Virus record (IMG/VR): IMGVR_UViG_3300009184_000029
Location: 1-64,000 of that record
Direction: 5' to 3' (one strand)
Length of the DNA stretch: 64,000 bases
Within the stretch, counting starts at the first letter, position 1, and the number at the start of each line of letters is the position of its first letter. Shown here piece after piece: positions 2 to 63,432 of the stretch. The translations under genes were made by a program, and so were the position numbers. Under the pieces are notes generated by a model. That model was not told the origin of the DNA, searched no databases, and worked only from the letters and a program-made list of their open reading frames with translations.

Positions 2-277
2 CTAATTAGAAATGGTTTAAAGTATAACGACTCTGAAACAAAGTTTGTTGAGATATATTCTGAAGATAATTTAATTTTCATACAAGATAATGGTAGAGGA
101 ATTACCCAAGATGACTTTAATTATTTATGTAAACCTTATACAAGAAAGGAAGGGCAGAAAGAAGCTGGCACTGGTTTGGGATTAAATATTTGTGTGGCAA
201 TTTTGGAAGAACACGGGTTTCAAATTACTTGTGAGAAAAATGAGATTGGTACTAAAATGAAAATAAAAATAAAATAA
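2..277 (+). CDS. Sensor histidine kinase, C-terminal HATPase_c domain (5' truncated by window edge)
   Basis: Manual frame +2 translation LIRNGLKYND...IQDNGRGI...GTGLGLNIC...KIKIK*; N, G1 and G2 boxes present; directly upstream of a REC protein. Confidence 0.9.
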   Translation, partial: LIRNGLKYNDSETKFVEIYSEDNLIFIQDNGRGITQDDFNYLCKPYTRKEGQKEAGTGLGLNICVAILEEHGFQITCEKNEIGTKMKIKIK

Positions 278-286
278 AGAAAAAAC

Positions 287-718
287 ATGATTGATTCAAT
301 TTTGTTAGTGGATGATGAGGATTTGTTCCACTTGGTTTTTGAGGACAGTTGTTCCTTGTTAGACATTACATTGTCATTAAAGAGTTTGAATAGCTCTGAT
401 GAGGCGGCTAAATTATTTGCTGACTGGCAAAAAAATTCAGATGGAAAACCTGAGTGTGTGTTTGTTGATTTAAATATTATAGGTTCATCATTTGATGGTA
501 TTGAACTTATCCGTAAGGTTAATTTTGAATATGGTAATCACGTAGTGATTGGTATTATATCTTCAAGTAACGAACCTGAAGAACAGGCTAAGGCAATTCA
601 AGCTGGTGCTCAGTTTTGGATTATTAAATCAGATGACATTGAACCAAGATTAGAAGAGTTTAGAAAAGATTACGAAGGATATAAAAACAGAACCGCACCA
701 TTCAAAGTTTATAAATGA
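287..718 (+). CDS. Single-domain response regulator (REC, CheY-like)
   Basis: ILLVDDED acidic pocket, VFVDLN phospho-acceptor Asp, ISSS, IIKS conserved Lys. Confidence 0.9.
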   Translation: MIDSILLVDDEDLFHLVFEDSCSLLDITLSLKSLNSSDEAAKLFADWQKNSDGKPECVFVDLNIIGSSFDGIELIRKVNFEYGNHVVIGIISSSNEPEEQAKAIQAGAQFWIIKSDDIEPRLEEFRKDYEGYKNRTAPFKVYK

Positions 719-1401
719 TTGTTTTAGATAAAGATACAAAGAAAATATTGATGGAAACCTTGAAGACCAAGAACATTGGTCTTGAAGGTAACATTACTAA
801 ATTAATAGATGCTCAAGACGACGAAGAGTTTAAAGAGTATCTTAAAACTTGTATTGAAAAAGATATATCGTCAAGACGGAAACGTTTAGAGATAACTAAA
901 CAAGTTCAGGTTCAGAACAAAGATTTAACCACACTCAACGAGGAGAACCAAAGAATGATGGAAGAACTCCAAGAAACATTAAAAAATGTTGAGGAGTCAA
1001 AACTAACAGTTGAAGTTCAAAACAGAGAACTAAATGAATGGAAACAGGAGAATTTAAGATTAACTGAAGAACTTCAACAAGAGATGGTTAAATCAGAACA
1101 AGCCAGAGTTGCTGCGGAAAACGCAAAGAATGAAGCTGAAAATAATTTAGATTTAATTCAAAAGAAAACTCAATTTGAGTTGATTAACAATATTGTTAGA
1201 GTTGCTCTTTATGTAATCATTGGTGTTGGAACTATAACTACTGGAATATATGTTTATTCTATGACAATAGGGATGGATACAGACATCATCGGCTCCACTT
1301 GGAGTAATATGTTTGGTATCCTGTTAACAAACAGTTTTAGTATCGTGGGAACAATACTTGGGGTGAAGTATGGTGCGAGTCCTAACAAAGATGATAAATA
1401 A
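715..1401 (+). CDS. Coiled-coil protein with two C-terminal transmembrane helices
   Basis: Long Q/E/N/L heptad-rich stretch then two hydrophobic segments; ATGA overlap with the REC gene. Confidence 0.75.
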   Translation: MIVLDKDTKKILMETLKTKNIGLEGNITKLIDAQDDEEFKEYLKTCIEKDISSRRKRLEITKQVQVQNKDLTTLNEENQRMMEELQETLKNVEESKLTVEVQNRELNEWKQENLRLTEELQQEMVKSEQARVAAENAKNEAENNLDLIQKKTQFELINNIVRVALYVIIGVGTITTGIYVYSMTIGMDTDIIGSTWSNMFGILLTNSFSIVGTILGVKYGASPNKDDK

Positions 1402-1419
1402 AAAATAAAAATTAAAAAA

Positions 1420-1944
1420 ATGAGTAGATTAAAAAGAATGTTATTCGGAGAAACCCCTTATGTGAAGGTGGAAGATAAAAATCGTTTCTATTACATGCTC
1501 CAACAGATGCAAACAAATAGATGGAAGATTACAGGAATTGTATTGTTCTTGTTCTTCTTTATCATATTTGGTATCAACATGGCGGTAATGTTTAATATTG
1601 ATATTGCGGAAAACTGGAAGGAGATGTTATTAATCCTTTTGGGAGCATTCGTTGGTAATTTGAACAAAGTAGTTGATTATTGGTTTAACTCTGAAGACAG
1701 AGATAAGATGTTAATTCAAAAAGTTGATGAAGAAGACGGAAGTAGTTTATCTAATGTAAGTGAGTTCCCAACAACTCCAAGACCACCACAACCACCAATC
1801 GTTGTAGTTACACAAGTTAAAGAAGAAACTCCTGAAGTTGTAGAAGAAACCACAACTTATACTGAACCTGAAGTATATGAGGAGCCAATCGTTGAGGAAT
1901 ACCCAACAGAGGAACCGACACAAGAAGGTGAAGAAAATATATAA
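1420..1944 (+). CDS. Two-TM membrane protein with acidic Pro/Glu-rich tail (holin-like topology)
   Basis: Two hydrophobic segments (ITGIVLFLFFFIIFG; MLLILLGAFVG) then PPQPP/EE-rich tail. Confidence 0.65.
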   Translation: MSRLKRMLFGETPYVKVEDKNRFYYMLQQMQTNRWKITGIVLFLFFFIIFGINMAVMFNIDIAENWKEMLLILLGAFVGNLNKVVDYWFNSEDRDKMLIQKVDEEDGSSLSNVSEFPTTPRPPQPPIVVVTQVKEETPEVVEETTTYTEPEVYEEPIVEEYPTEEPTQEGEENI

Positions 1945-1960
1945 CAAATAAGGATTGTTG

Positions 1961-1990
1961 AAAACCCCACTTGAAAAGGTGGGGTTTTTT
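1961..1990 (+). terminator. Rho-independent terminator
   Basis: AAAACCCCAC-TTGAAAAG-GTGGGGTTTTTT hairpin plus U-tract after the two-component operon. Confidence 0.85.
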
Positions 1991-2005
1991 ATTTATATTA
2001 GCGTT

Positions 2006-2407
2006 ATGGAAAATAATAAAGACAGAAAATATTTGGGATATTTGATATGGTTAGTATTCGTACTGCTTACGACTCATATAATTTTTAAGATAAGAAATGA
2101 TATCCAAGAAAGAAACCAACAACTTGAAAAACAAAAGAATGAATTAAAAATTCAAAAAAATGTAGATGATACAGTTGTTTGTGATACAATGATTAGTCAA
2201 CAAACTGAATCTAAACCTTGGCCAATTAGAGTCCAAAGTGTTGAAAAATCAGATGAAAAGAACACACCTAAATGGCAAGTCATTGCTGAGAATGGTATAA
2301 TGTATTATACCAATAAAAAACCAAAGGTTGGTGATATTGCTTTCTATCTAAACGATAATGATGAGATAACTGACAAGTATGGAAATGGAGTGGAAAGAAC
2401 AAGATAA
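2006..2407 (+). CDS. Hypothetical membrane-anchored protein
   Basis: Start moved to MENNK because the ORF-track extension crosses the terminator; N-terminal TM helix. Confidence 0.65.
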   Translation: MENNKDRKYLGYLIWLVFVLLTTHIIFKIRNDIQERNQQLEKQKNELKIQKNVDDTVVCDTMISQQTESKPWPIRVQSVEKSDEKNTPKWQVIAENGIMYYTNKKPKVGDIAFYLNDNDEITDKYGNGVERTR

Positions 2408-2594
2408 GAATGATTTCATTGCTTTATATAAGAATTACATTCTTCGTGTAGAACAAATGGGTCCGCAGAAATGGTGGTGGGCTGTTTATAAAGATAACGA
2501 AGATTTATGTTATGATAACCCATTTACAAGAAATGCTGAATATGGAAAAAAACTCGCTGAAGAGTGCGTCAGAGAAGACGAAACAAATGGTTAG
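2379..2594 (+). CDS. Hypothetical phage protein
   Basis: ORF in co-oriented overlapping gene run. Confidence 0.6.
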   Translation: MEMEWKEQDKNDFIALYKNYILRVEQMGPQKWWWAVYKDNEDLCYDNPFTRNAEYGKKLAEECVREDETNG

Positions 2595-2718
2595 ATTCCC
2601 AAATGAAAGTATTCCATTTGAAATTGAATTAGATATGAATGAGTTTCATCTTGAGAAAGATTTTGGAGATGAACTATTTGGGTATTGGAGAGGTGTATAC
2701 ATATCAATAAAAAAATGA
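2587..2718 (+). CDS. Small hypothetical protein (MVRFPNES...)
   Basis: Start overlaps previous stop; fills gap in operon. Confidence 0.5.
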   Translation: MVRFPNESIPFEIELDMNEFHLEKDFGDELFGYWRGVYISIKK

Positions 2719-2942
2719 AGAAATATATCCACGTAAACCAACACAAGATAAGGTCCAACAAGAAGAATAACGAGTTAGAACCTGTTATAACCATTAAAGA
2801 AGGTAGAAAGAATACTTACTGTTCTGAAGTGGAAATCTTGGGACCTAGTCGTGTTGTGTATGGTGGTAATGAAAAGACATTACTATCTTGTGGTGCTCGT
2901 GTGATAATTGAAACTGAATCTGAAATAAACATAATACGATGA
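2715..2942 (+). CDS. Hypothetical phage protein (MKKYIHVNQH...)
   Basis: ATGA overlap with previous gene; IHVNQHKI...LSCGARVIIET motifs typical of a widespread small phage protein (recall). Confidence 0.65.
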   Translation: MKKYIHVNQHKIRSNKKNNELEPVITIKEGRKNTYCSEVEILGPSRVVYGGNEKTLLSCGARVIIETESEINIIR

Positions 2943-3035
2943 ATAGAAAAACTAATGAAACTGATTTGACAGGTTTGGTAATAATGATTATTATTTTTAC
3001 AATTACACTTTTTGTAACTTTATTCTCAGTTTAAT

Positions 3036-3533
3036 ATGGCAACACTTGAATCACAATATTGGAACTTTTTAGAAAAGAATCCATCATCTACTCTTACATT
3101 TGAGGAGTGGAAACAAAAATGGGCTGATGATATGGGACCCATATTTGAGAAATTAAATAATCCACCAATTGAATGGAACCTATATCAGAGATATGCTGAT
3201 AGTTTCATAGGTCACGAAGACATCCCAAGTTTTGAATGGTTTAAACACGAACTGGAACACAACGAAGAGTTCAGGGGGAAGTATGGGGATGTTGATTCTG
3301 TATATTGTCCTGTATGTTCGGGATGTGGTGAAGATGGTTGTTGTAATGCAACAATGTGTAAAATGAGTCCTGATGGGAGTTATTGTGAATCTTACTTAAA
3401 AGATTTGAAGGTTTCCTACAAAATGGACGAGTGGTTTATGTTGAACTTGTACGAATCATTGACCGAAGAACAACGGAAACAATACGATGAAGCTTACGAA
3501 CAAATATTAGATGAGGTATATGGAAAAAATTGA
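3036..3533 (+). CDS. Hypothetical protein with Cys cluster (CPVCSGCGEDGCC)
   Basis: ORF; Cys-rich putative metal-binding motif. Confidence 0.65.
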   Translation: MATLESQYWNFLEKNPSSTLTFEEWKQKWADDMGPIFEKLNNPPIEWNLYQRYADSFIGHEDIPSFEWFKHELEHNEEFRGKYGDVDSVYCPVCSGCGEDGCCNATMCKMSPDGSYCESYLKDLKVSYKMDEWFMLNLYESLTEEQRKQYDEAYEQILDEVYGKN

Positions 3534-3863: not shown

Positions 3864-4970
3864 ATGAATAAATTAGACCAACAATACCAAACATTACTCC
3901 AAACCATTTTAGATTTTGGGGTGGAGAAGAAAGACCGAACTGGTACAGGAACCAAATCAATTTTTGGTTATACCATTCGTCATAATATGAAAGATGGTTT
4001 TCCACTCCTCACAACCAAGAAGATGGCTTGGAAAACTATGGTAACTGAATTACTATGGTTTTTAAGAGGTGACACCAACATCAAATACCTTGTTGATAAC
4101 AATTGTCATATTTGGGATGGTGACGCTTATAAGAGGTATTCGGTTATTGCTGGAGTATCAACCCAAGTTGAGACATTAACACAAGAAGAATTCATCAACA
4201 AAATCAAAACAGATGATGAGTTTGCTAAGAAGTGGGGTGAATTAGGTCCAATTTATGGTAAGCAATGGAGAAGGTGGCATACAGGTTGGGATGTAGTTGA
4301 AGATAAGAGTAAAGAGGCTGGCGTAAGAAGGATTGAGTATGGGATAGACCAAATCGCAAACCTAATCAACGACCTTAAAACAAATCCAGACTCAAGACGA
4401 TTAATGGTTAATGCTTGGAATGTAGGTGAGATAGACCAAATGGTTCTTCCACCTTGTCATTATGGATTTCAAGTTTATACAAGAGAGTTGAGTTTGGAGG
4501 AAAGATTATTATTGGCAGATAAAATTTGTAAAGAAATTAGACAAGATTTATATACATACTCTTTCAATAACCCAATATATACTGGCGGTATAGACCAAAG
4601 ACCAGATGATGTAGAAAGACATCATTTACTAAATGACTTAAACATTCCAACAAGAGCAATCTCTTTAATGTGGAATCAACGTTCAGTAGATACATTCTTG
4701 GGTTTACCATTCAACATTGCAAGTTATGGTTTGTTATTAACTATGATTGCAGATGAAATGAATATGGTACCTGATGAATTGATTGGTAACTTGGGTGACA
4801 CTCACATTTACCTAAATCATATTGAACAAGCAAAAGAACAGATTGGTAGAGAACCATTTCCACTTCCTAAAGTAATAGTTCAAGATGGAATATTCTGTAG
4901 TTCAGTCAGTGATGTTATTTTGGAAAACTACCAATCACAACCATCAATTAAGGCACCGTTAAGTAATTAA
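3864..4970 (+). CDS. thyA: Thymidylate synthase ThyA with two in-frame insertions
   Basis: DRTGTGT, FPLLTTKK, ELLWFLRG, LPPCH catalytic Cys, QRSVD-FLGLPFNIASY, GDTHIY-NH. Confidence 0.97.
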   Translation: MNKLDQQYQTLLQTILDFGVEKKDRTGTGTKSIFGYTIRHNMKDGFPLLTTKKMAWKTMVTELLWFLRGDTNIKYLVDNNCHIWDGDAYKRYSVIAGVSTQVETLTQEEFINKIKTDDEFAKKWGELGPIYGKQWRRWHTGWDVVEDKSKEAGVRRIEYGIDQIANLINDLKTNPDSRRLMVNAWNVGEIDQMVLPPCHYGFQVYTRELSLEERLLLADKICKEIRQDLYTYSFNNPIYTGGIDQRPDDVERHHLLNDLNIPTRAISLMWNQRSVDTFLGLPFNIASYGLLLTMIADEMNMVPDELIGNLGDTHIYLNHIEQAKEQIGREPFPLPKVIVQDGIFCSSVSDVILENYQSQPSIKAPLSN

Positions 4971-22587: not shown

Positions 22588-22689
22588 TATATATAAATAC
22601 AAAGATAGGGACAAAGTTGAACTATATATATTGGGTTAATAATTTCATAAGAATATGATAATATGGTTTGTTCTTTACTTTCTATACTT

Positions 22690-23400
22690 ATGGAAATGGA
22701 ACTATCAAAGTTATTAACCATTGTTATACCTTGTAAGAACGAGGGGATAACTATCAATCAAACTTTATCGATATTAAATTTCCAAAATGGTATTGATGGT
22801 GTTAAGGTTATTGTTTCCGATTCTTCGGATGATGGAACAACATATCATTTGGAGAACAGAAACAGGGACTATTTCAATCTTGACATCATTCAGGGTGGGT
22901 TACCTAGCAAAGCAAGAAATAATGGAGCAGAACGAGCTGAAACTCCGTTTGTATTGTTTATGGACGCCGACATGATGATACTTGATACAAACTTACTTCA
23001 GGAGTGTATGGAGATGATGAGAAGAGAAAGGTTAGATTTGTTGACAACAAAGGTAAGAACAACAAACGGAAAATACAATTATGTGTTCAGAACATTTGAT
23101 TTGATTCAGGGGATAACAAGATATATCACACCATTTTGTTTAGGTGGGTTTATGTTAATGAGAAAGTCAACATTCATAACACTAAACGGATTTGATGAAG
23201 AGGCACAGGTTGCTGAGGATTACTTACTATCAAAACAGATAAAGACAAATAGATTTAAGGTATATAGAAAAACCATATTCACATTACCAAGAAGGTTTGA
23301 GAGTAAGGGATTATGGTATATGACAAAGTTAATGATAATGTCATTCCTTAACAGAAATAACAAGGAGTTTTTCTCCGACCACAATTCATATTGGAAATGA
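22690..23400 (+). CDS. Family 2 glycosyltransferase
   Basis: TIVIPCKNE, VIVSDSSDD, KARNNGA, VLFMDAD, GGFML, AED. Confidence 0.9.
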   Translation: MEMELSKLLTIVIPCKNEGITINQTLSILNFQNGIDGVKVIVSDSSDDGTTYHLENRNRDYFNLDIIQGGLPSKARNNGAERAETPFVLFMDADMMILDTNLLQECMEMMRRERLDLLTTKVRTTNGKYNYVFRTFDLIQGITRYITPFCLGGFMLMRKSTFITLNGFDEEAQVAEDYLLSKQIKTNRFKVYRKTIFTLPRRFESKGLWYMTKLMIMSFLNRNNKEFFSDHNSYWK

Positions 23401-24107
23401 GATACAGAACAATTATAATGAGTGATTTACATCTTGGCGCAAAACAATCACAGACGGACAAGATAATAAAGTTCTTGGAAGAAAACCAAACGGACAAGTT
23501 AATACTAAACGGAGATATCATAGATGGTTGGGCACTCAAAGGTAGTGGTAAGTGGACAAAGGATTGCACCAAGATATTCAGGAAGTTTATGAAGATGTCG
23601 GAGAAGGATACAAAGGTAATTTATATAAGGGGAAACCACGATGACTTCCTAAAAGATTTCATTCCGTTTAAGTTAAACAATATAAGGATTGTAAGGAAGT
23701 ATGTACATGAAGGAATGGACGGAAGAACATACTTTTGTTTTCACGGGGATGTATTGGATTTCGTTATAATGGAAGCAAGATGGTTGGCAGTAATCGGTGG
23801 ATGGTCATATGATATTGTCATTAAGTTTAATACTCTATACAACAAAATAAGAAAGTGGTTTAACTTACCATATCATTCACTGGCAAATACAATAAAACAA
23901 TCTGTTAAAGGGGCGATTAACTTTGTATCTGATTTCGAAGAAAACGCGAAAGGTTTAACAAAACAGAAGGGATATGATGTTGCGGTGTGTGGACATATTC
24001 ATCACCCGAAGTTAGAGAATGACTATATGAATTCAGGAGACTTTTGTGAGAACTCTACATGTCTTGTAGAAGATTATAATGGGGAGTGGAAAATAATTAC
24101 TATATAA
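23391..24107 (+). CDS. UDP-2,3-diacylglucosamine hydrolase-like metallophosphoesterase (LpxH-like)
   Basis: SDLHLG, LNGDIIDGW, RGNHDD, FHGD, CGHIHHP, YMNSGD. Confidence 0.85.
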   Translation: MEMRYRTIIMSDLHLGAKQSQTDKIIKFLEENQTDKLILNGDIIDGWALKGSGKWTKDCTKIFRKFMKMSEKDTKVIYIRGNHDDFLKDFIPFKLNNIRIVRKYVHEGMDGRTYFCFHGDVLDFVIMEARWLAVIGGWSYDIVIKFNTLYNKIRKWFNLPYHSLANTIKQSVKGAINFVSDFEENAKGLTKQKGYDVAVCGHIHHPKLENDYMNSGDFCENSTCLVEDYNGEWKIITI

Positions 24108-36834: not shown

Positions 36835-37161
36835 ATGAGAAAAAGTTACAGTAAAATAAGACACATTCAAGAATCTAATACATTATTAGAAAATAGAAGA
36901 AGAACAATAATGGAACAAGTTCCTCCGGCTCCAGCACCTGCTGCAACACCCCCGACACCTGCTCCCGCACCTGTACCTGCGACACCACCTGCGACAGCAC
37001 CTGTACCAGGACCTAATCCACCCGCACCCGTATCTCAAGAGGTTGCCGATTGTACTCCAGGTGTTACAGGTTCTTTAGATGCTAACGGTATGTTAACAAA
37101 ACCTGATGGAACTAAATGTAAAGTTGTTTGTTTATCAGGAACACCTCCAACTGCAGGATAA
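36835..37161 (+). CDS. Pro/Ala-rich protein with leader (RHIQESNTLLE)
   Basis: PAPAPAATPP low-complexity linker after IME. Confidence 0.6.
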   Translation: MRKSYSKIRHIQESNTLLENRRRTIMEQVPPAPAPAATPPTPAPAPVPATPPATAPVPGPNPPAPVSQEVADCTPGVTGSLDANGMLTKPDGTKCKVVCLSGTPPTAG

Positions 37162-37617: not shown

Positions 37618-38811
37618 ATGAAATTAATAATTACAGAAACTCAATTAAAATACTTAATAACTGAGGGTAAAGAGGTTATTGGGGGAACTTTTAGTACAGA
37701 CTTGGAGAACTCTCCAAAACATCATAGTAAAAGGGCTTTTGGTAATTGGCAATCTGATAATGCTTGGGATATTTTTTCACCTCCTGGTACTGTAGTTAAT
37801 TCCTACACTGAAGGAACTGTAAAACGTGTTAGAGTAACTAATAAAACGACAGGAAAAGTTTTTGGTACACAAATCACAGTTGAGGGTGAAAATGGTTATC
37901 CTGATATATTTTACACACATTTAAAAAATGTAAAATTAGAAAAAGGGGATAAGGTTAAAGTTGGTGATTATATTGGTGAAATATCTGAATGGGATACTGC
38001 ACCTAAGATAACTCACGTTCATATAGGACTTCCGGTTGGTCAACATTTAAGGGATTTATTAAATAAAAAAGATTCTAGTAAAATATTTTCAGGTGATAAA
38101 ACAGTTTCAAACACTGATGATGAAAAACCTGAAAATAAAGAATTTGAAAAATCATCTGAAGTAAAAAAAGATGAAAGAATTGAAAACGGTAAAGTTAAAA
38201 TCACTGGCAATTTTGATAGTGAACAACTTACTAACATTAATTTTTTAATTGATGAAATGAACAAAGAAGGTATAACTGACCCTTATGCTCAAGTTGGAAT
38301 ATTATCGGTTATTAAAAAAGAGTCAGGATTTAAACCAAAAAGTGAAGTGTCTTACCATAAAACAAGTAACGAAAGAATAAGAAAGTTATTTGGTAAAAGA
38401 GTTGCAAACTATAGTGATTCTGAATTAGACGAATTAAAGAAAGATGTTAAGAAATTCTTTAATGTGATTTACGCAAAGACAGTTGGTAATCAAGGTGGTA
38501 GTGATGGGTATAACTACAGAGGTAGAGGATTTAATCAGTTGACCGGAATTAAAAATTATGAAAAATACAGTAATATGATTGGTATGGGTAGTCAATTAGT
38601 CCAAGACCCTGATTTGGTTAATGACCCTAAAATTGCTGCGAAAATTGCTCTTAAATTTTTTACAAAAGGTAAACCAGCATCCGAATTTCCTAAATTTACT
38701 TCAAAAGAAGAAGCTGCGATTAAGTTTGCAGATATTAATGCAGGTGGTGGACGTAGTTCTCATAGAAATAGTGCATTAAAGGCTTCTGAAAATTTTGAAG
38801 TTGTTGCTTAA
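37618..38811 (+). CDS. Peptidoglycan hydrolase: M23 peptidase + GH19 lysozyme-like domain, with leader
   Basis: AWDIFSPPGT, YTHL, HVHIG (M23); KESGF, YNYRGRGFNQLTG..NY (GH19); MKLIITETQLKYLITE leader. Confidence 0.8.
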   Translation: MKLIITETQLKYLITEGKEVIGGTFSTDLENSPKHHSKRAFGNWQSDNAWDIFSPPGTVVNSYTEGTVKRVRVTNKTTGKVFGTQITVEGENGYPDIFYTHLKNVKLEKGDKVKVGDYIGEISEWDTAPKITHVHIGLPVGQHLRDLLNKKDSSKIFSGDKTVSNTDDEKPENKEFEKSSEVKKDERIENGKVKITGNFDSEQLTNINFLIDEMNKEGITDPYAQVGILSVIKKESGFKPKSEVSYHKTSNERIRKLFGKRVANYSDSELDELKKDVKKFFNVIYAKTVGNQGGSDGYNYRGRGFNQLTGIKNYEKYSNMIGMGSQLVQDPDLVNDPKIAAKIALKFFTKGKPASEFPKFTSKEEAAIKFADINAGGGRSSHRNSALKASENFEVVA

Positions 38812-39501: not shown

Positions 39502-39882
39502 ATGTCAGAATCTGCAGGAATAATAGTTAAAGTTAATGATGAAATTTTACTTTGTAAAAGAAGCGAAAGTGTAAATCATGGTGGATATTGGTCTCCACCT
39601 ATGGGTGGGGTTGAAAAAGGGGAATCCCCTGCCGAGGCGGCTGTCAGAGAATTTAAAGAAGAAACTAATATTAGTATAAAGGGTACTCTTAAAAAAATAA
39701 TAAAATTAGATAACAAAATCACAATTTTTTTAAGTGTGAAAAATACTAAAATAAAACCTGATTTAGATAAGGCTAAAGATGGGTTTGAACACAGTGAATG
39801 TGGTTATTTTAAAGATAAAGATTTAGACGATTTAAAAATAAGTCAAAAATTTTTAAAGGTATATAGAGAAATTTTAAATTAA
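39502..39882 (+). CDS. NUDIX hydrolase
   Basis: GGVEKGESPAEAAVREFKEETN Nudix box. Confidence 0.92.
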   Translation: MSESAGIIVKVNDEILLCKRSESVNHGGYWSPPMGGVEKGESPAEAAVREFKEETNISIKGTLKKIIKLDNKITIFLSVKNTKIKPDLDKAKDGFEHSECGYFKDKDLDDLKISQKFLKVYREILN

Positions 39883-40359: not shown

Positions 40360-40518
40360 ATGAAAATCAAATTAACCGCCTGCATGTGGGCATTAGCATT
40401 AAGTTTATTATTAATCTTCAACAGTCAAGATGATTTCTCATTTTACACTGGAATTGTATTAATAATCATCCAATCTCTTTTATGGGGAAATCTAATGGGT
40501 AAACTAAAAAATGATTAA
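40360..40518 (+). CDS. Small two-TM membrane protein
   Basis: Start reassigned; two hydrophobic segments. Confidence 0.55.
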   Translation: MKIKLTACMWALALSLLLIFNSQDDFSFYTGIVLIIIQSLLWGNLMGKLKND

Positions 40519-40940
40519 TTAACTGATAGTACTTCTAAATCAAAAATTAGAGTTTTACCTGCTAATGGGTGGTTAGCGTCTAATGATGCTACTCCGTCAC
40601 CAATCTCCATTACTTTAACTCTGATTGGACCCATATCGCTTTCTCCAATTAATTCATCCCCAACTTTAACATCTGTTGGTAACATGTCTAATTTAATGTC
40701 GCTGATTAATTCTCCGCGATATTCACCGTAGGCATTTTCTGACGTGATTGTTACAGTCTTCTTATCACCCTCTGACATATCGATTAGGCCGTCCTCAAAA
40801 CCTTTAATTAGTTCTCCGTTACCTACTGTAATGTTCAAAGGCTCTCTACCTTCGTTTAATGAGGAATCGAAAACCGTTCCGTCCTCAAGTCGTCCAGTAT
40901 AATTAACTGAAACTTTACTTCCTGTTTTAATTTTATTCAT
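40515..40940 (-). CDS. FKBP-type peptidyl-prolyl isomerase (SlyD/FkpB-like)
   Basis: VSVNYTGRLEDGTVFDSS, LIKGFEDGL, AYGE, DANHPLAGKTLIFDLEV. Confidence 0.93.
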   Translation of the reverse strand: MNKIKTGSKVSVNYTGRLEDGTVFDSSLNEGREPLNITVGNGELIKGFEDGLIDMSEGDKKTVTITSENAYGEYRGELISDIKLDMLPTDVKVGDELIGESDMGPIRVKVMEIGDGVASLDANHPLAGKTLIFDLEVLSVN

Positions 40941-41086
40941 AACCAATTATAATATTTTTTTAGTATTAGTTAAAGTAATTTACAAAATTAATTTTGGAAA
41001 TTAACACTAAAACTATAATATTTTTATTTCTATCCTTGTTAATAATGATAGTCCAAGTTTTTTGGAAATAATAATATTTATTAATT

Positions 41087-56829: not shown

Positions 56830-56906
56830 GCCCCCATAGCTCAGCTGGATAGAGCAACAACCTTCTAAGTTGTGGGTCACACGTTCGAATCGTGTTGGGG
56901 GTACCA
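56830..56906 (+). tRNA. tRNA-Arg(UCU)
   Basis: Acceptor GCCCCCA/TGGGGGT, D-arm AGCTCAGCTGGATAGAGC, anticodon arm ACAAC-CTTCTAA-GTTGT, TTCGAAT loop, encoded CCA. Confidence 0.97.
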
Positions 56907-61374: not shown

Positions 61375-61401
61375 AAAAAGGGGAAGTTATTCCCCTTTTT
61401 T
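61373..61401. terminator. Bidirectional terminator
   Basis: AAAAAAAGGGGAA-GTTA-TTCCCCTTTTTT. Confidence 0.8.
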
Positions 61402-63432
61402 CTTTCTTGTTTTCTTTTGTTTTTCAGAGTCTTTTATTAATACCTCTTCTGATTCATTAATAGAAATTTCATATTCTTTATCTATTACGATATTATTTTT
61501 CAAAACTTCATCTGAAATAAAATCTTCGATTTTTTCTTGTATTGCTCTTTTTAGAGGTCTTGCTCCATACACTTCATCAAATCCAATTTTTGAAATAAAG
61601 TCGATTACAGTTTGGTCAAATTTAATTTTATACCCAAGACTTTCCAATCTATTCTTTAATATAGAAACTTCAGAATAAACAATTTTTTGAACGTCACTAT
61701 CTTGTAAGGTATTAAATATAATTGTTTCATCTAATCTGTTAATGAACTCAGGTGCAAAATAATTTTTAAGTTCTTTTGTTAAAACACTCTTTTTTGCCTC
61801 TTCATTTTTATATACGTTATTACTTGTACCGAATCCAATACCTGAACCAAACTCCTGCATTTTTTTAACTCCAATATTTGAGGTCATGATAATTAAACAG
61901 TTTTTAAAATTAATCTTTCTACCAAAACTATCTGTCATATACCCCTCATCTAAAAGTTGTAATAACGCTGAGAATATATCTTTATGTGCTTTCTCAACCT
62001 CATCGAATAATACAACTGAATATGGTTTTGTTTTAACTTGTTCAGTTAATTGACCACCTTCTTCATACCCAATATAACCAGGAGGTGAACCTATTAATCT
62101 TGAAACACTGTGTTTTTCTTGGAATTCACTCATGTCAACCCTGATTAAATTATTATCACTTCCAAAAATTTGTTTTGCAAGTTCTTTGGCGAGTAATGTT
62201 TTACCAACACCTGTCGAACCTAAAAATATGAATGAACCAATTGGTTTGTTAGGGTCTTTAATACCTAAACGATTTCTTCTTATCGATTTTGAAATTTTTT
62301 GAATCGCTTCTTTTTGACCAATGACAGATTTATTTAATTCTTCTTCCAAATTAATTAAAGCATTTTTATCATCCAAAGTTAATTTTGTCAAAGGTATTTT
62401 TGTCATCATTGATACTACCTCATAAACTAATTCATCTGAAATATCTTTTCTATTATTCAATAAATCCTGTTCAAATTTCTTTTTTTCAGTTTCTAATTGT
62501 CCAATAATCTTTTTTTCTTTGTCCCTAAGACTTGCGGCCTCTTCATAATTTTGTTTCTTAACAACTGTTATTTTGAGTTGTCTAATTTCCTGAGCTTTCT
62601 TTTTTAATTCCTCAATAATTTCAGGATTCTTAACATCAACCTGTGCTCTTGCTCCAACTTCGTCTAATATATCAAACGCTTTATCAGGAAATTCTCTATC
62701 TGTAATATATCTTTCCGCTAAATCGACACAAATTTGTAAAATTTCATCAGAATATTTTACTTTATGGTAATTTTCATATTTGTCCCTAACATTTTTTAAT
62801 ATTTGTAAAGTTTCATCTTTTGTGGATGAATTAACAATTACTTTTTGAAATCTTCTATCTAAAGCACCATCCTTTTCAATTTGTTTTTTGTATTCATCTA
62901 AAGTTGTTGCACCAATACATTGAATTTCTCCTCTTGATAATGCAGGTTTTAAAATATTAGATGCGTCTAAGGTACCTGAAGCGTTACCCGCTCCAACTAT
63001 AGTATGAATCTCATCAATGAATAATATTACGTTTGGATTTGCTTGAATTTCCTCCAATATCACCTTCAATCTTTCTTCAAATTGTCCTCTATATTTAGTA
63101 CCGGCAACAACTGAATTTAATTCTAACGATAAAATTCTTTTATCTAATAGATTTCGTGGGCAATCTCCTTCAAATATTTTCATTGCCAATCCCTCAACAA
63201 TTGCGGTTTTACCACACCCTGGTTCTCCAATAATAATTGGGTTATTCTTTTTACGTCTAGATAAAATTTGCGCAATTCTAACTATTTCAGTCTCCCTACC
63301 AATTACAGGGTCCAATTTACCTTCTTCCGCAAGTTTGATTAAATCCTTACTGAAGTTATCTAAAACTGGTGTTTGTGAACCACTATCATTATTTTTTGAA
63401 GGTTTAGAACCTTCCCCGATTGAATCTGTCAT
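61387..63432 (-). CDS. clpC: ClpC-like Hsp100 AAA+ ATPase lacking the N-terminal repeat domain
   Basis: LDPVIGR, GEPGCGKT, KYRGQFEER, FIDEIH; UVR-like NYEEAASLRDKE; GSTGVGKT, DEVEKAH, IGF loop, YGARPLKRAI. Confidence 0.9.
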   Translation of the reverse strand: MTDSIGEGSKPSKNNDSGSQTPVLDNFSKDLIKLAEEGKLDPVIGRETEIVRIAQILSRRKKNNPIIIGEPGCGKTAIVEGLAMKIFEGDCPRNLLDKRILSLELNSVVAGTKYRGQFEERLKVILEEIQANPNVILFIDEIHTIVGAGNASGTLDASNILKPALSRGEIQCIGATTLDEYKKQIEKDGALDRRFQKVIVNSSTKDETLQILKNVRDKYENYHKVKYSDEILQICVDLAERYITDREFPDKAFDILDEVGARAQVDVKNPEIIEELKKKAQEIRQLKITVVKKQNYEEAASLRDKEKKIIGQLETEKKKFEQDLLNNRKDISDELVYEVVSMMTKIPLTKLTLDDKNALINLEEELNKSVIGQKEAIQKISKSIRRNRLGIKDPNKPIGSFIFLGSTGVGKTLLAKELAKQIFGSDNNLIRVDMSEFQEKHSVSRLIGSPPGYIGYEEGGQLTEQVKTKPYSVVLFDEVEKAHKDIFSALLQLLDEGYMTDSFGRKINFKNCLIIMTSNIGVKKMQEFGSGIGFGTSNNVYKNEEAKKSVLTKELKNYFAPEFINRLDETIIFNTLQDSDVQKIVYSEVSILKNRLESLGYKIKFDQTVIDFISKIGFDEVYGARPLKRAIQEKIEDFISDEVLKNNIVIDKEYEISINESEEVLIKDSEKQKKTRKKKGE

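What the first reader, a model, noticed from the sequence alone, without database searches (positions are those of the whole stretch)
2..1990. Phage-encoded two-component operon coupled to two membrane proteins
Seen: histidine kinase ATPase domain, stand-alone REC protein with intact phospho-acceptor residues, a coiled-coil two-TM protein and a second two-TM protein, tightly linked and closed by one terminator. Known: complete kinase-plus-receiver pairs are uncommon in phages, and a REC protein without output domain acts through protein contacts. Inference: a phage sensory circuit whose output is a membrane complex with holin-like topology, possibly controlling lysis timing or superinfection exclusion.
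Basis: partly seen in the sequence, partly recalled or inferred. Interest (0 to 1): 0.68.

Follow-up and report, generated by a model that had tools for sequence, protein, structure and literature searches.

The report
Phage sensor kinase wired to lysis membrane protein
An uncultured freshwater T4-like jumbo phage carries its own sensor kinase and receiver protein, always followed by a phage-only membrane protein that in relatives lies inside the cell-lysis gene cluster, so the phage probably uses a sensed signal to time host lysis.

Summary
Window 2-1990 encodes the ATPase end of a histidine kinase (cut by the contig end), a stand-alone receiver with intact phospho-acceptor residues, a coiled-coil protein with a C-terminal two-helix membrane hairpin (CCTM), a second small membrane protein (TM2) and a strong terminator. 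The genome is a T4-like jumbo phage.

Kinase-receiver-CCTM is an invariant, translationally coupled trio in hundreds of uncultured viral contigs. TM2 occurs only in close relatives. No GenBank phage record and no named family matches CCTM. The only genome hits are eight MAG contigs from scattered phyla.

Two results tie the trio to lysis:
- In 49 of 86 distinct relatives an endolysin gene lies within four genes of the trio. It belongs to one of three sequence clusters and its side and strand vary.
- A sister lineage (281 viral contigs) fuses PAS domains like the kinase's directly to the CCTM hairpin, with no kinase core or receiver. Two such loci read gene by gene sit in endolysin plus Phage_holin_4_1 cassettes.

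Best reading: a phage two-component circuit whose receiver acts on CCTM to tune lysis timing. This rests on gene context, one fusion event and a weak co-fold. In this window the endolysin block is absent: a 4.1-kb indel at 2716.

The parts
2..277 (+). C-terminal 91 aa of a sensor histidine kinase (ATP-binding domain), cut by the contig end. In the closest relative (L004, 98% identical over these 91 aa) the full protein is 423 aa: two N-terminal TM helices, a PAS domain, a DHp region with the H-box RHDMHSG, and HATPase_c.
   Evidence: HATPase_c E 1.8e-13. tblastn of the L004 kinase against the genome finds only 2-274. L004 ORF and Pfam domains. H-box in 91 of 91 kinases.
287..718 (+). Single-domain response regulator (REC, 143 aa) with a conserved C-terminal tail of about 25 aa.
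   Evidence: Response_reg 33.8 bits, cut-off 30.2. D9 D10 D61 S92-94 K114 invariant; 76-97% identity across relatives in which CCTM is only 49-87% identical.
715..1401 (+). CCTM, 228 aa: conserved N-domain (1-70; LEGN and RRKRL motifs), a central coiled coil of variable length, a conserved juxtamembrane helix, and a near-invariant C-terminal TM hairpin. Predicted topology N-in/C-in. Proposed output of the circuit.
   Evidence: Alignment A1. AF2 model with a continuous helix 37-185 into TM1. Hydropathy and charge. 5539 relatives with no Pfam domain. Atlas clusters 96-100% viral. ATGA overlap with REC.
1420..1944 (+). TM2, 174 aa: basic N-terminus, one strong and one weaker hydrophobic helix, acidic proline-rich C-tail. 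Last gene of the operon. Holin-like topology, but found only in the closer relatives.
   Evidence: alignment A3; Atlas clusters 100% viral. In the relatives L076, L108 and L110 it lies directly upstream of the endolysin. hhalign against the small 2-TM family c5 was inconclusive (prob 19%).
1960..1999 (+). Intrinsic terminator (13-bp GC-rich stem, 4-nt loop, T run) that closes the operon.
   Evidence: sequence. A hairpin plus T run at the same place in 18 of 20 distinct relatives, with different stems.
2006..2407 (+). TM3, 133 aa from ATG 2006: N-terminal signal-anchor helix plus a probable periplasmic domain. First gene after the terminator; a neighbour, not part of the conserved core.
   Evidence: Present only in the closest relatives.
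2716..2717 (.). Indel junction. Relatives of the L004/L082 type carry here a 4.1-kb block with the endolysin (PG_binding_1 + GH19), a 100-aa TM protein and further genes. The window lacks that block.
   Evidence: blastn of L082 against the genome: L082 7482-7977 matches window 2218-2716, and L082 12115-12684 matches window 2716-3285. Gene content of the block.

Best explanation
The region is the 3' part of a phage two-component operon: kinase, receiver, CCTM, TM2, terminator.

Inferred mechanism:
1. The membrane-anchored kinase senses a cytoplasmic cue through its PAS domains. Some relatives add a GAF domain, and some add a second kinase with a periplasmic domain.
2. The kinase phosphorylates the stand-alone receiver on D61.
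3. The receiver binds the cytoplasmic part of CCTM.
4. CCTM's long continuous helix passes the change to its near-invariant membrane hairpin.
5. The hairpin acts within the inner membrane on the lysis machinery, like an antiholin or holin regulator. It delays or triggers hole formation and so sets the time of lysis.

Shown: the domains, the intact catalytic and phospho-acceptor residues, the invariant gene trio and its translational coupling, restriction to uncultured phage sequence, the association with endolysin and holin genes in relatives, and the PAS-hairpin fusion.

Inferred: phosphotransfer, the receiver-CCTM contact, the membrane target, the direction of the effect on lysis, and the signal sensed.
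For: (a) Intact parts. HATPase_c and Response_reg both score above their Pfam cut-offs. The H-box is present in 91 of 91 relatives' kinases. The receiver's D9/D10/D61/S/K residues are invariant, and the receiver is far more conserved than its neighbours.

(b) Conserved trio. Kinase-receiver-CCTM is found in essentially all of 158 related viral loci. The receiver stop overlaps or abuts the CCTM start in 78 of 83 distinct pairs.

(c) Fusion. In L162-L165 one ORF of 371-385 aa joins two PAS domains (40-55% identical to the kinase's PAS) to the CCTM juxtamembrane helix and hairpin (52-57% identical), with no DHp/CA and no receiver.
- In the model, the helix leaving PAS2 runs unbroken into TM1. The hairpin thus sits where an output domain sits.
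- 281 viral contigs carry the fusion.
- On the hairpin tree the fusions form one clade (1 change, SH-aLRT 100).

(d) Lysis context.
- An endolysin-type gene lies within four genes of the trio in 49 of 86 distinct loci, and in 35 of 51 loci with at least three genes on both sides. In 37 it is the adjacent gene.
- These genes fall into three separate sequence clusters (PG_binding_1+GH19; a cluster matching PHROG endolysin 33083; a cluster matching PHROG endolysin 894) and occur on either side and strand.
- 70 of 80 fusion loci have an endolysin gene in the locus.
- L165 and L163 hold endolysin plus Phage_holin_4_1 (28.3 and 45.2 bits, cut-off 22.2) next to the fusion.
- In a 100%-complete genome (G007, 304 kb) and a 91%-complete one (G006, 294 kb), the only homologue of the endolysin lies beside the trio.

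(e) Co-fold. CCTM(1-160) with the receiver gave 'weak support': ipSAE 0.44 (median of 3 runs), best of 3 controls 0.00. The runs agree in at least 97% of contacts, and the partner's pLDDT is at least 87. The mark was reached by 58 of 80 solved complexes and 2 of 110 mismatched pairs. At 0.60 or under, only 7 of those 80 solved complexes reached it, as did both passing mismatches.

(f) Expression. Contigs from three RNA-seq libraries of lake or freshwater samples match the receiver (309-578), CCTM (823-1083) and TM2 (1422-1669, 1788-1938) with 0-3 differences.
Against: - In the window's own genome no endolysin or holin lies beside the operon. The endolysin block is absent at 2716. The only GH19-like gene is a 397-aa M23+GH19 protein 36 kb away. 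No Phage_holin_4_1 match was found in the 76%-complete record.
- About a third of well-flanked relatives (16 of 51) show no recognisable endolysin within four genes.
- CCTM and TM2 match no holin, antiholin or spanin family, and Foldseek found no structural match.
- The fusion is a single evolutionary event, so it counts once.
- A full-length CCTM occurs without an adjacent kinase or receiver in L146 and L157, and no receiver was found in the 74% of that genome held.
- The co-fold pass is of the weak class.
- RNA-library contigs do not prove transcription.
- A terminator separates TM2 from the downstream endolysin in relatives, so the two are not one transcript.
Confidence: 0.5

Rival explanations
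1. CCTM is itself the hole-forming protein: an unusually large holin or pinholin with a cytoplasmic regulatory coiled coil. The phosphorylated receiver triggers or blocks its oligomerisation. TM2, c5 and Phage_holin_4_1 would then be accessory proteins or antiholins.
For: In 13 distinct loci CCTM is the gene directly upstream of the endolysin, which is the usual holin position. Its second TM helix is almost invariant and carries a ladder of small or polar residues (G201, T205, S209, G212, G216). Such ladders are known from pinholin helices; that comparison is from my own knowledge and was not tested. The periplasmic loop is also conserved.
Against: The two fusion loci read in detail, L165 and L163, already hold a canonical Phage_holin_4_1 gene and a small class-II-like 2-TM protein (c5). 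At 228 aa with a 150-residue helix, CCTM is atypical for holins. It matches no holin family.
Confidence: 0.15
2. The circuit controls a membrane process other than lysis, such as superinfection exclusion, membrane energisation or another host-takeover function. Its nearness to endolysins would then reflect inherited synteny, or a general clustering of envelope-directed genes in these phages.
For: In the window, and in the complete genome G003 (L040), the module's immediate neighbours are not lysis genes. The neighbours vary widely: DnaK, an aaRS-like gene, phosphoesterases. No functional data exist.
Against: Endolysins of three different clusters, on either side and strand, stay next to the module in both the two-component and the fusion lineage. 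That pattern is hard to explain by inheritance alone. Even in G003 the only GH19-like gene lies 6.4 kb from CCTM in a 322-kb genome. There is no match to defence-system models.
Confidence: 0.25
3. The receiver's true target is something else, such as a host protein or a role as a phosphate sink for host kinases. CCTM would then be only a co-translated membrane protein with no role in the signalling.
For: Single-domain receivers can act as phosphate sinks or bind diverse partners (established knowledge). The co-fold support is weak. CCTM occurs without a receiver in L146 and L157.
Against: The PAS-hairpin fusion places the hairpin directly downstream of the same type of sensor domain. Translational coupling is conserved in 78 of 83 pairs. 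The co-fold scored 0.44 against 0.00 for the controls.
Confidence: 0.1

Closest known systems
T4 lysis inhibition (holin T with antiholins RI and RIII)
   Same: A T4-like phage uses dedicated proteins to make lysis timing depend on a sensed condition, by acting post-translationally on the membrane lysis machinery (established knowledge of T4).
   Different: No homology was found: the PHROG scans gave no rI, rIII or t family hit. Sensing here is by a PAS histidine kinase plus receiver, or by fused PAS domains, and is cytoplasmic in the window's type. The effector is a 2-TM hairpin on a long cytoplasmic helix, not a periplasmic domain.
Bacterial LytSR / CidR control of the holin-like CidAB and LrgAB proteins
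   Same: A two-component system linked to holin-like membrane proteins and cell lysis.
   Different: LytR is a DNA-binding (LytTR) regulator that acts on transcription, and the system is cellular. Here the receiver has no DNA-binding domain (143 aa), the kinase lacks the LytS membrane domain, and the system is phage-encoded.
CheA/CheY-type signalling: a single-domain receiver that binds a membrane-associated machine
   Same: A stand-alone receiver with an intact acidic pocket, whose output must be a protein contact.
   Different: The kinase is a classical membrane HisKA-type dimerisation/ATPase kinase with PAS domains, not CheA. The proposed target is a phage-specific membrane protein. No chemotaxis genes are present.
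Phage-encoded sensory switches (VP882 VqmA-Phage quorum receptor; arbitrium AimR)
   Same: Phages that carry their own sensor to decide when to kill the host (PMC7790227 reviews the quorum-sensing case; found).
   Different: Those are one-component transcription factors that control the lysis-lysogeny decision. This is a kinase/receiver phosphorelay, or a PAS-membrane fusion, placed inside the lysis cassette of what look like large virulent myophages.
PHROG families phrog_857 and phrog_10912 (phage HATPase-containing proteins) and phrog_731 (phage receiver proteins)
   Same: The window's kinase fragment and receiver hit these phage families (E 1e-14, 1e-7 and 1e-6), so kinase-like and receiver-like proteins do occur in sequenced phages.
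   Different: These families are annotated 'unknown function' or 'kinase'. Among 50,697 GenBank phage records, none matches CCTM or this receiver, and only 3 short records match the PAS region of the kinase.

Membership tests
Two-component system: sensor histidine kinase | HATPase_c catalytic domain with N, G1, F and G2 boxes | tested here: met
   Pfam HATPase_c 51.3 bits, cut-off 26.4. The motifs NGLKYN, DNGRG, F..L.KPY and GTGLGL are visible in the 91-aa fragment.
Two-component system: sensor histidine kinase | Dimerisation/phospho-acceptor (DHp) helix with a conserved histidine | tested here: inconclusive
   Not present in the window, because the gene is cut by the contig end. In relatives the motif RHDMHSG is present in 91 of 91 kinases, but Pfam HisKA was not reported at E <= 0.01 for the L004 kinase.
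Two-component system: response regulator receiver | REC fold with acidic pocket (DD), phospho-acceptor Asp, Ser/Thr and Lys | tested here: met
   Response_reg 33.8 bits, cut-off 30.2. D9, D10, D61, S92-94 and K114 invariant in 31 sequences.
Two-component system | Phosphotransfer from kinase to receiver | not testable with these tools
   Needs a biochemical assay.
Holin / antiholin (phage lysis membrane proteins) | Sequence membership in a described holin or antiholin family | tested here: not met
   CCTM and TM2 have no significant Pfam or PHROG lysis family hit and no Foldseek match.
Holin / antiholin (phage lysis membrane proteins) | Gene located in a lysis cassette next to an endolysin | tested here: inconclusive
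   Not met in the window. Met in 49 of 86 distinct relatives, in 70 of 80 fusion loci, and in the 91-100% complete genomes G006 and G007.
Holin / antiholin (phage lysis membrane proteins) | Small membrane protein with one or more TM helices and a charged cytoplasmic C-terminus | tested here: inconclusive
   TM2 has one strong and one weak helix, a basic N-terminus and an acidic (not basic) tail. CCTM has 2 TM helices but a 158-aa cytoplasmic N-part.
Holin / antiholin (phage lysis membrane proteins) | Changes membrane permeability or lysis timing | not testable with these tools
   Needs expression experiments.
LytSR-type lysis regulators | LytS 5TM-Lyt sensor domain and LytTR DNA-binding output | tested here: not met
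   The kinase in relatives has 2 TM helices + PAS (+GAF) + HATPase_c. The receiver has no output domain.
Anti-phage defence or superinfection-exclusion systems in PADLOC | Match to a PADLOC model | tested here: not met
   No hit at E <= 0.01 for the kinase, receiver, CCTM, TM2, fusion or c5.

The most novel reading that the evidence does not exclude
A widespread group of freshwater T4-like jumbo phages uses inside-out signalling to time lysis. A phage-encoded PAS sensor reads the state of the infected cell. It drives a dedicated membrane hairpin that gates the holin, either through a kinase and receiver relay or by direct fusion. That would be the first two-component system known to act post-translationally on a phage lysis machine, and a new class of antiholin or holin regulator.
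Probability: 0.4. Interest if true: 0.85.

Novelty: new variant of a known kind. Interest (0 to 1): 0.72.

Why it matters
Lysis timing sets burst size and phage fitness. The known ways phages adjust it are few: T4 lysis inhibition and the dual-start antiholins. A phage-encoded sensor circuit feeding into the lysis cassette would show that large environmental phages measure the state of the infected cell and adjust the time of killing.

The family is very abundant. There are 5539 clusters of CCTM relatives in public metagenomes, and several hundred viral contigs. It is absent from GenBank phage records and I found no paper describing it. It also offers a compact, testable pair of architectures, relay versus direct fusion, for studying how a cytoplasmic signal is passed into a membrane hairpin.

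Tried and rejected
- Upstream kinase. I looked for the sensor part in the same genome. The contig starts inside the gene, and the other end holds a 1250-aa minus-strand ORF and no kinase. A DNA run holds a contig reaching 152 nt beyond position 1, but its letters are not available.
- Recent bacterial transfer: rejected. No NCBIfam equivalog is approached. Only 8 hits occur in 185,579 species genomes, all on MAG contigs from scattered phyla. One of them (L165) is the same sequence as an IMG/VR viral contig.
- Known family for CCTM or TM2. Pfam, PHROGs, NCBIfam and PADLOC gave only sub-threshold coiled-coil noise. Atlas clusters are unnamed viral ones. Foldseek against PDB gave nothing at E <= 0.001; a 2-helix likeness to the HtrII hairpin at E 4 is not evidence.
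- TM2 as a homologue of the small 2-TM family c5 that accompanies the module elsewhere. hhalign gave probability 19%, E 1e-3, aligning only the hairpins. Inconclusive.
- Isolated phages carrying the module: none in 50,697 GenBank records. The nearest cultured phage by DNA is Flavobacterium phage immuto, through thyA only.
- Literature: four searches and two papers read. The jumbo-phage survey PMC7824862 describes a different, kinase-independent REC-like domain. A 2026 preprint on huge-phage envelope proteins does not mention it.
- Canonical holin in the own genome: no Phage_holin_4_1 match.
- The large HMMER search was not run. The word search and family scans already showed thousands of uncharacterised relatives.
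Full report
**1. What is in the window**

The window is bases 1-64000 of a 222,829-bp linear IMG/VR virus record, estimated 76% complete. The same contig encodes a T4-type major capsid protein (Pfam Gp23, E 8.8e-64) and a large terminase (E 1.4e-14). It is therefore a T4-like jumbo myophage. G+C is about 30%. Runs holding the stretch are mostly freshwater metagenomes.

Region 2-1990 holds four same-strand genes:
- 2-277: the last 91 aa of a histidine kinase (HATPase_c, E 1.8e-13).
- 287-718: a 143-aa receiver (Response_reg, 33.8 bits against a cut-off of 30.2).
- 715-1401: a 228-aa protein, here called CCTM. Its ATG overlaps the receiver's stop (ATGA).
- 1420-1944: a 174-aa protein, here called TM2.
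- 1960-1989: a 13-bp GC-rich hairpin followed by a T run.

The kinase is cut by the contig end. The other end of the contig holds no kinase N-terminus.

**2. Anatomy**

*Receiver.* It keeps D9, D10, D61, S92-94 and K114. All are invariant in 31 diverse relatives. The receiver is 76-97% identical across lineages in which CCTM is only 49-87% identical. It is the most constrained protein of the set. It has no output domain, only a conserved tail of about 25 residues.

*CCTM.* It has four parts:
- a conserved N-terminal 70 residues;
- a central coiled coil whose length varies (185-229 aa forms exist);
- a conserved juxtamembrane helix;
- a nearly invariant two-helix hairpin with a conserved short loop.

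AlphaFold2 (pLDDT 83) models a small N-domain and a single helix from residue 37 to 185 that runs straight into the first membrane helix. The charge distribution, the lack of a signal peptide, and the PAS-fused relatives all put the N-terminal part in the cytoplasm.

*TM2.* It has a basic N-terminus, a strong hydrophobic helix (40-58), a weaker one (69-87) and an acidic proline-rich tail.

*Terminator.* A hairpin plus T run follows the TM2 stop in 18 of 20 distinct relatives, with different stem sequences. The operon end is therefore conserved. The next ORF most likely starts at ATG 2006.

**3. Relatives and the missing sensor**

The receiver has relatives in 413 viral contigs and CCTM in 253. 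Contigs reach 322 kb, and some are rated 100% complete.

The closest relative, L004, gives the full kinase of 423 aa. It has two N-terminal TM helices with a very short loop, a PAS domain, a DHp region with the H-box RHDMHSG, and HATPase_c. Other relatives have two PAS domains, or GAF plus PAS. Many carry a second kinase with a signal peptide, a periplasmic domain of about 190 residues and one TM helix, preceded by a secreted 205-aa protein. The H-box is present in 91 of 91 kinases.

Across 158 loci (86 distinct CCTM sequences), kinase-receiver-CCTM is the invariant core. The receiver-to-CCTM spacing is -4 or -1 nt in 78 of 83 distinct pairs. TM2 is found only in the closer relatives (20 distinct sequences). 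TM3 and the small ORFs after it are rarer still.

**4. Not bacterial, not described**

- No NCBIfam equivalog comes near its cut-off for the kinase or the receiver.
- CCTM has 5539 relatives at E <= 0.001 in the metagenome protein collection. None has a Pfam domain, and the names sources give them are scattered and inconsistent.
- The Atlas clusters nearest to CCTM and TM2 are 96-100% viral.
- A scan of one genome for each of 185,579 species found 8 hits. All lie on MAG contigs from unrelated phyla, and one (L165) is the same sequence as an IMG/VR viral contig.
- No GenBank phage record matches CCTM or this receiver. Only three short records match the kinase's PAS region.
- Four literature searches found no description.

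**5. The link to lysis**

*(a) Endolysin adjacency.* Among the 86 distinct loci, 49 have an endolysin-type gene within four genes of the trio. Among loci with at least three genes on each side the figure is 35 of 51. In 37 loci the endolysin is the adjacent gene. The genes belong to three separate clusters:
- PG_binding_1 + GH19;
- a cluster matching PHROG endolysin 33083/3000;
- a cluster matching PHROG endolysin 894.

They lie downstream of CCTM, or upstream of the kinase on either strand.

*(b) Near-complete genomes.* In G007 (304 kb, 100% complete) the only homologue of the endolysin starts 14 nt after CCTM. In G006 (294 kb, 91% complete) the only one lies just upstream of the kinase. In G003 (322 kb, 100% complete) the only GH19-like gene is 6.4 kb from CCTM.

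*(c) Fusion lineage.* L162-L165 carry a single ORF of 371-385 aa. It joins two PAS domains, homologous to those of the kinase, to the CCTM juxtamembrane helix and hairpin. It has no DHp/CA, and no receiver gene is present.
- In its model, the helix leaving PAS2 runs unbroken into the first membrane helix.
- 281 viral contigs carry this fusion.
- 70 of the 80 loci fetched have an endolysin gene in the locus, again of the three types. In most, a small 2-TM protein (family c5) lies beside the fusion. None has the receiver or the kinase core.
- In L165 the order is c5, fusion, GH19 endolysin, Phage_holin_4_1 (28.3 bits, cut-off 22.2), a TM-plus-coil protein, and a signal-peptide protein.
- In L163 the order is fusion, c5, PG_binding-containing lysin, Phage_holin_4_1 (45.2 bits).
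- On a tree of the hairpin module the fusions form one clade (one change, SH-aLRT 100). The fusion is thus a single event, but both lineages keep the lysis context.

**6. Mechanism proposed**

The fusion shows that the hairpin is what the PAS signal ultimately addresses. In the window's lineage the same connection is made by kinase, receiver and CCTM's N-terminal part.

A co-fold of CCTM 1-160 with the receiver gave weak support:
- ipSAE 0.44 (median of three runs), best of three controls 0.00.
- The runs agree in at least 97% of contacts, and the partner's pLDDT is at least 87.
- The mark was reached by 58 of 80 solved complexes and 2 of 110 mismatched pairs.
- At 0.60 or under, only 7 of those 80 solved complexes reached it, as did both passing mismatches.

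The two fusion cassettes read in detail (L165, L163) already contain a canonical holin, so I rate an antiholin or holin-regulator role as most likely. A holin role for CCTM itself comes second. The signal sensed is unknown. The PAS domains lack the LOV cysteine motif (motif knowledge is mine). The window-type kinase has almost no periplasmic loop, so an intracellular cue is expected. The second kinase type in relatives could add a periplasmic input.

**7. What weakens the case for this window**

- The window lacks the 4.1-kb block that follows the small ORFs in L004-type relatives. That block holds the endolysin, a 100-aa TM protein and further genes. The junction is at 2716.
- The only GH19-like gene of the contig is a 397-aa M23+GH19 protein at 37618-38811.
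- No Phage_holin_4_1 match exists in the 76% of the genome held.
- A third of well-flanked relatives (16 of 51) show no recognised endolysin nearby.
- L146 and L157 have CCTM without an adjacent kinase or receiver.
- All functional statements are inferences from context.

**8. Expression**

Contigs from three RNA-seq libraries of lake or freshwater samples match the receiver (309-578, 0 differences), CCTM (823-1083, 2 differences) and TM2 (1422-1669 and 1788-1938, 1 and 3 differences). The tool warns that DNA can be present in such libraries, so this is only a hint of expression.

**9. Verdict**

The conserved unit is kinase-receiver-CCTM, it is specific to uncultured phages, and its comparative context points to control of lysis. 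It is best filed as a new variant that combines two known kinds, a two-component system and a lysis-timing regulator. It remains unproven until phosphotransfer, binding and lysis-timing tests are done.

Noticed in passing
window 22672-24104: A GT2 glycosyltransferase and a calcineurin-like phosphoesterase lie here. They are 73.6% identical in DNA to the two genes that sit directly upstream of the kinase in L004-type relatives. The region around the module has therefore been rearranged between close relatives.
   Followed up: partly
window 37618-38811 (+): A 397-aa protein with an N-terminal metallo-endopeptidase (M23-like) part and a C-terminal GH19-like part (phrog_181 endolysin, E 6e-26). 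It is the only recognisable peptidoglycan hydrolase on the contig. It could be a virion-associated lysin or the endolysin.
   Followed up: partly
L002 2450-5984 and many other loci (e.g. L005, L031): Many relatives have two kinases in a row, separated by a secreted 205-aa protein (cluster c7). One has 2 TM + PAS-PAS. The other has a signal peptide, a periplasmic coiled domain and 1 TM. Both are followed by a single receiver, which suggests two inputs converging on one receiver.
   Followed up: partly
L026, L030, L044, L045 (e.g. L045 3324-4046): A GIY-YIG/NUMOD3 homing-endonuclease gene (240 aa) is inserted between the kinase and the receiver in some relatives.
   Followed up: partly
window 61387-63432 (-): A 681-aa ATP-dependent protease (phrog_4871, E 3e-232), unusual cargo for a phage.
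   Followed up: no
window 3864-4970 (+): Thymidylate synthase of 368 aa, longer than usual. It is the only stretch of the first 6 kb with nucleotide similarity to a cultured phage (Flavobacterium phage immuto, 82%).
   Followed up: no
window 56830-56906 (+): The single tRNA gene in the window: tRNA-Arg(TCT).
   Followed up: no
relatives, e.g. L117 9694-11559 and L092 3043-3894: A DnaK-like gene (about 620 aa, by its N-terminal motif) and a class II aminoacyl-tRNA-synthetase-like gene (tRNA-synt_2, E 1e-13) recur a few genes from the module in many relatives.
   Followed up: no
window 36835-37161 (+), 39502-39882 (+) and 40515-40946 (-): A 108-aa Pro/Ala-rich ORF, an ORF with a Nudix-box-like motif, and an ORF that looks like an FKBP-type prolyl isomerase. 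All three were judged by eye from the translations only.
   Followed up: no
L146 and L157 (e.g. L157 3232-6215): A full-length CCTM follows two unrelated genes (297 and 427 aa) with no kinase or receiver beside it. No receiver was found in the 74% of that genome held.
   Followed up: partly
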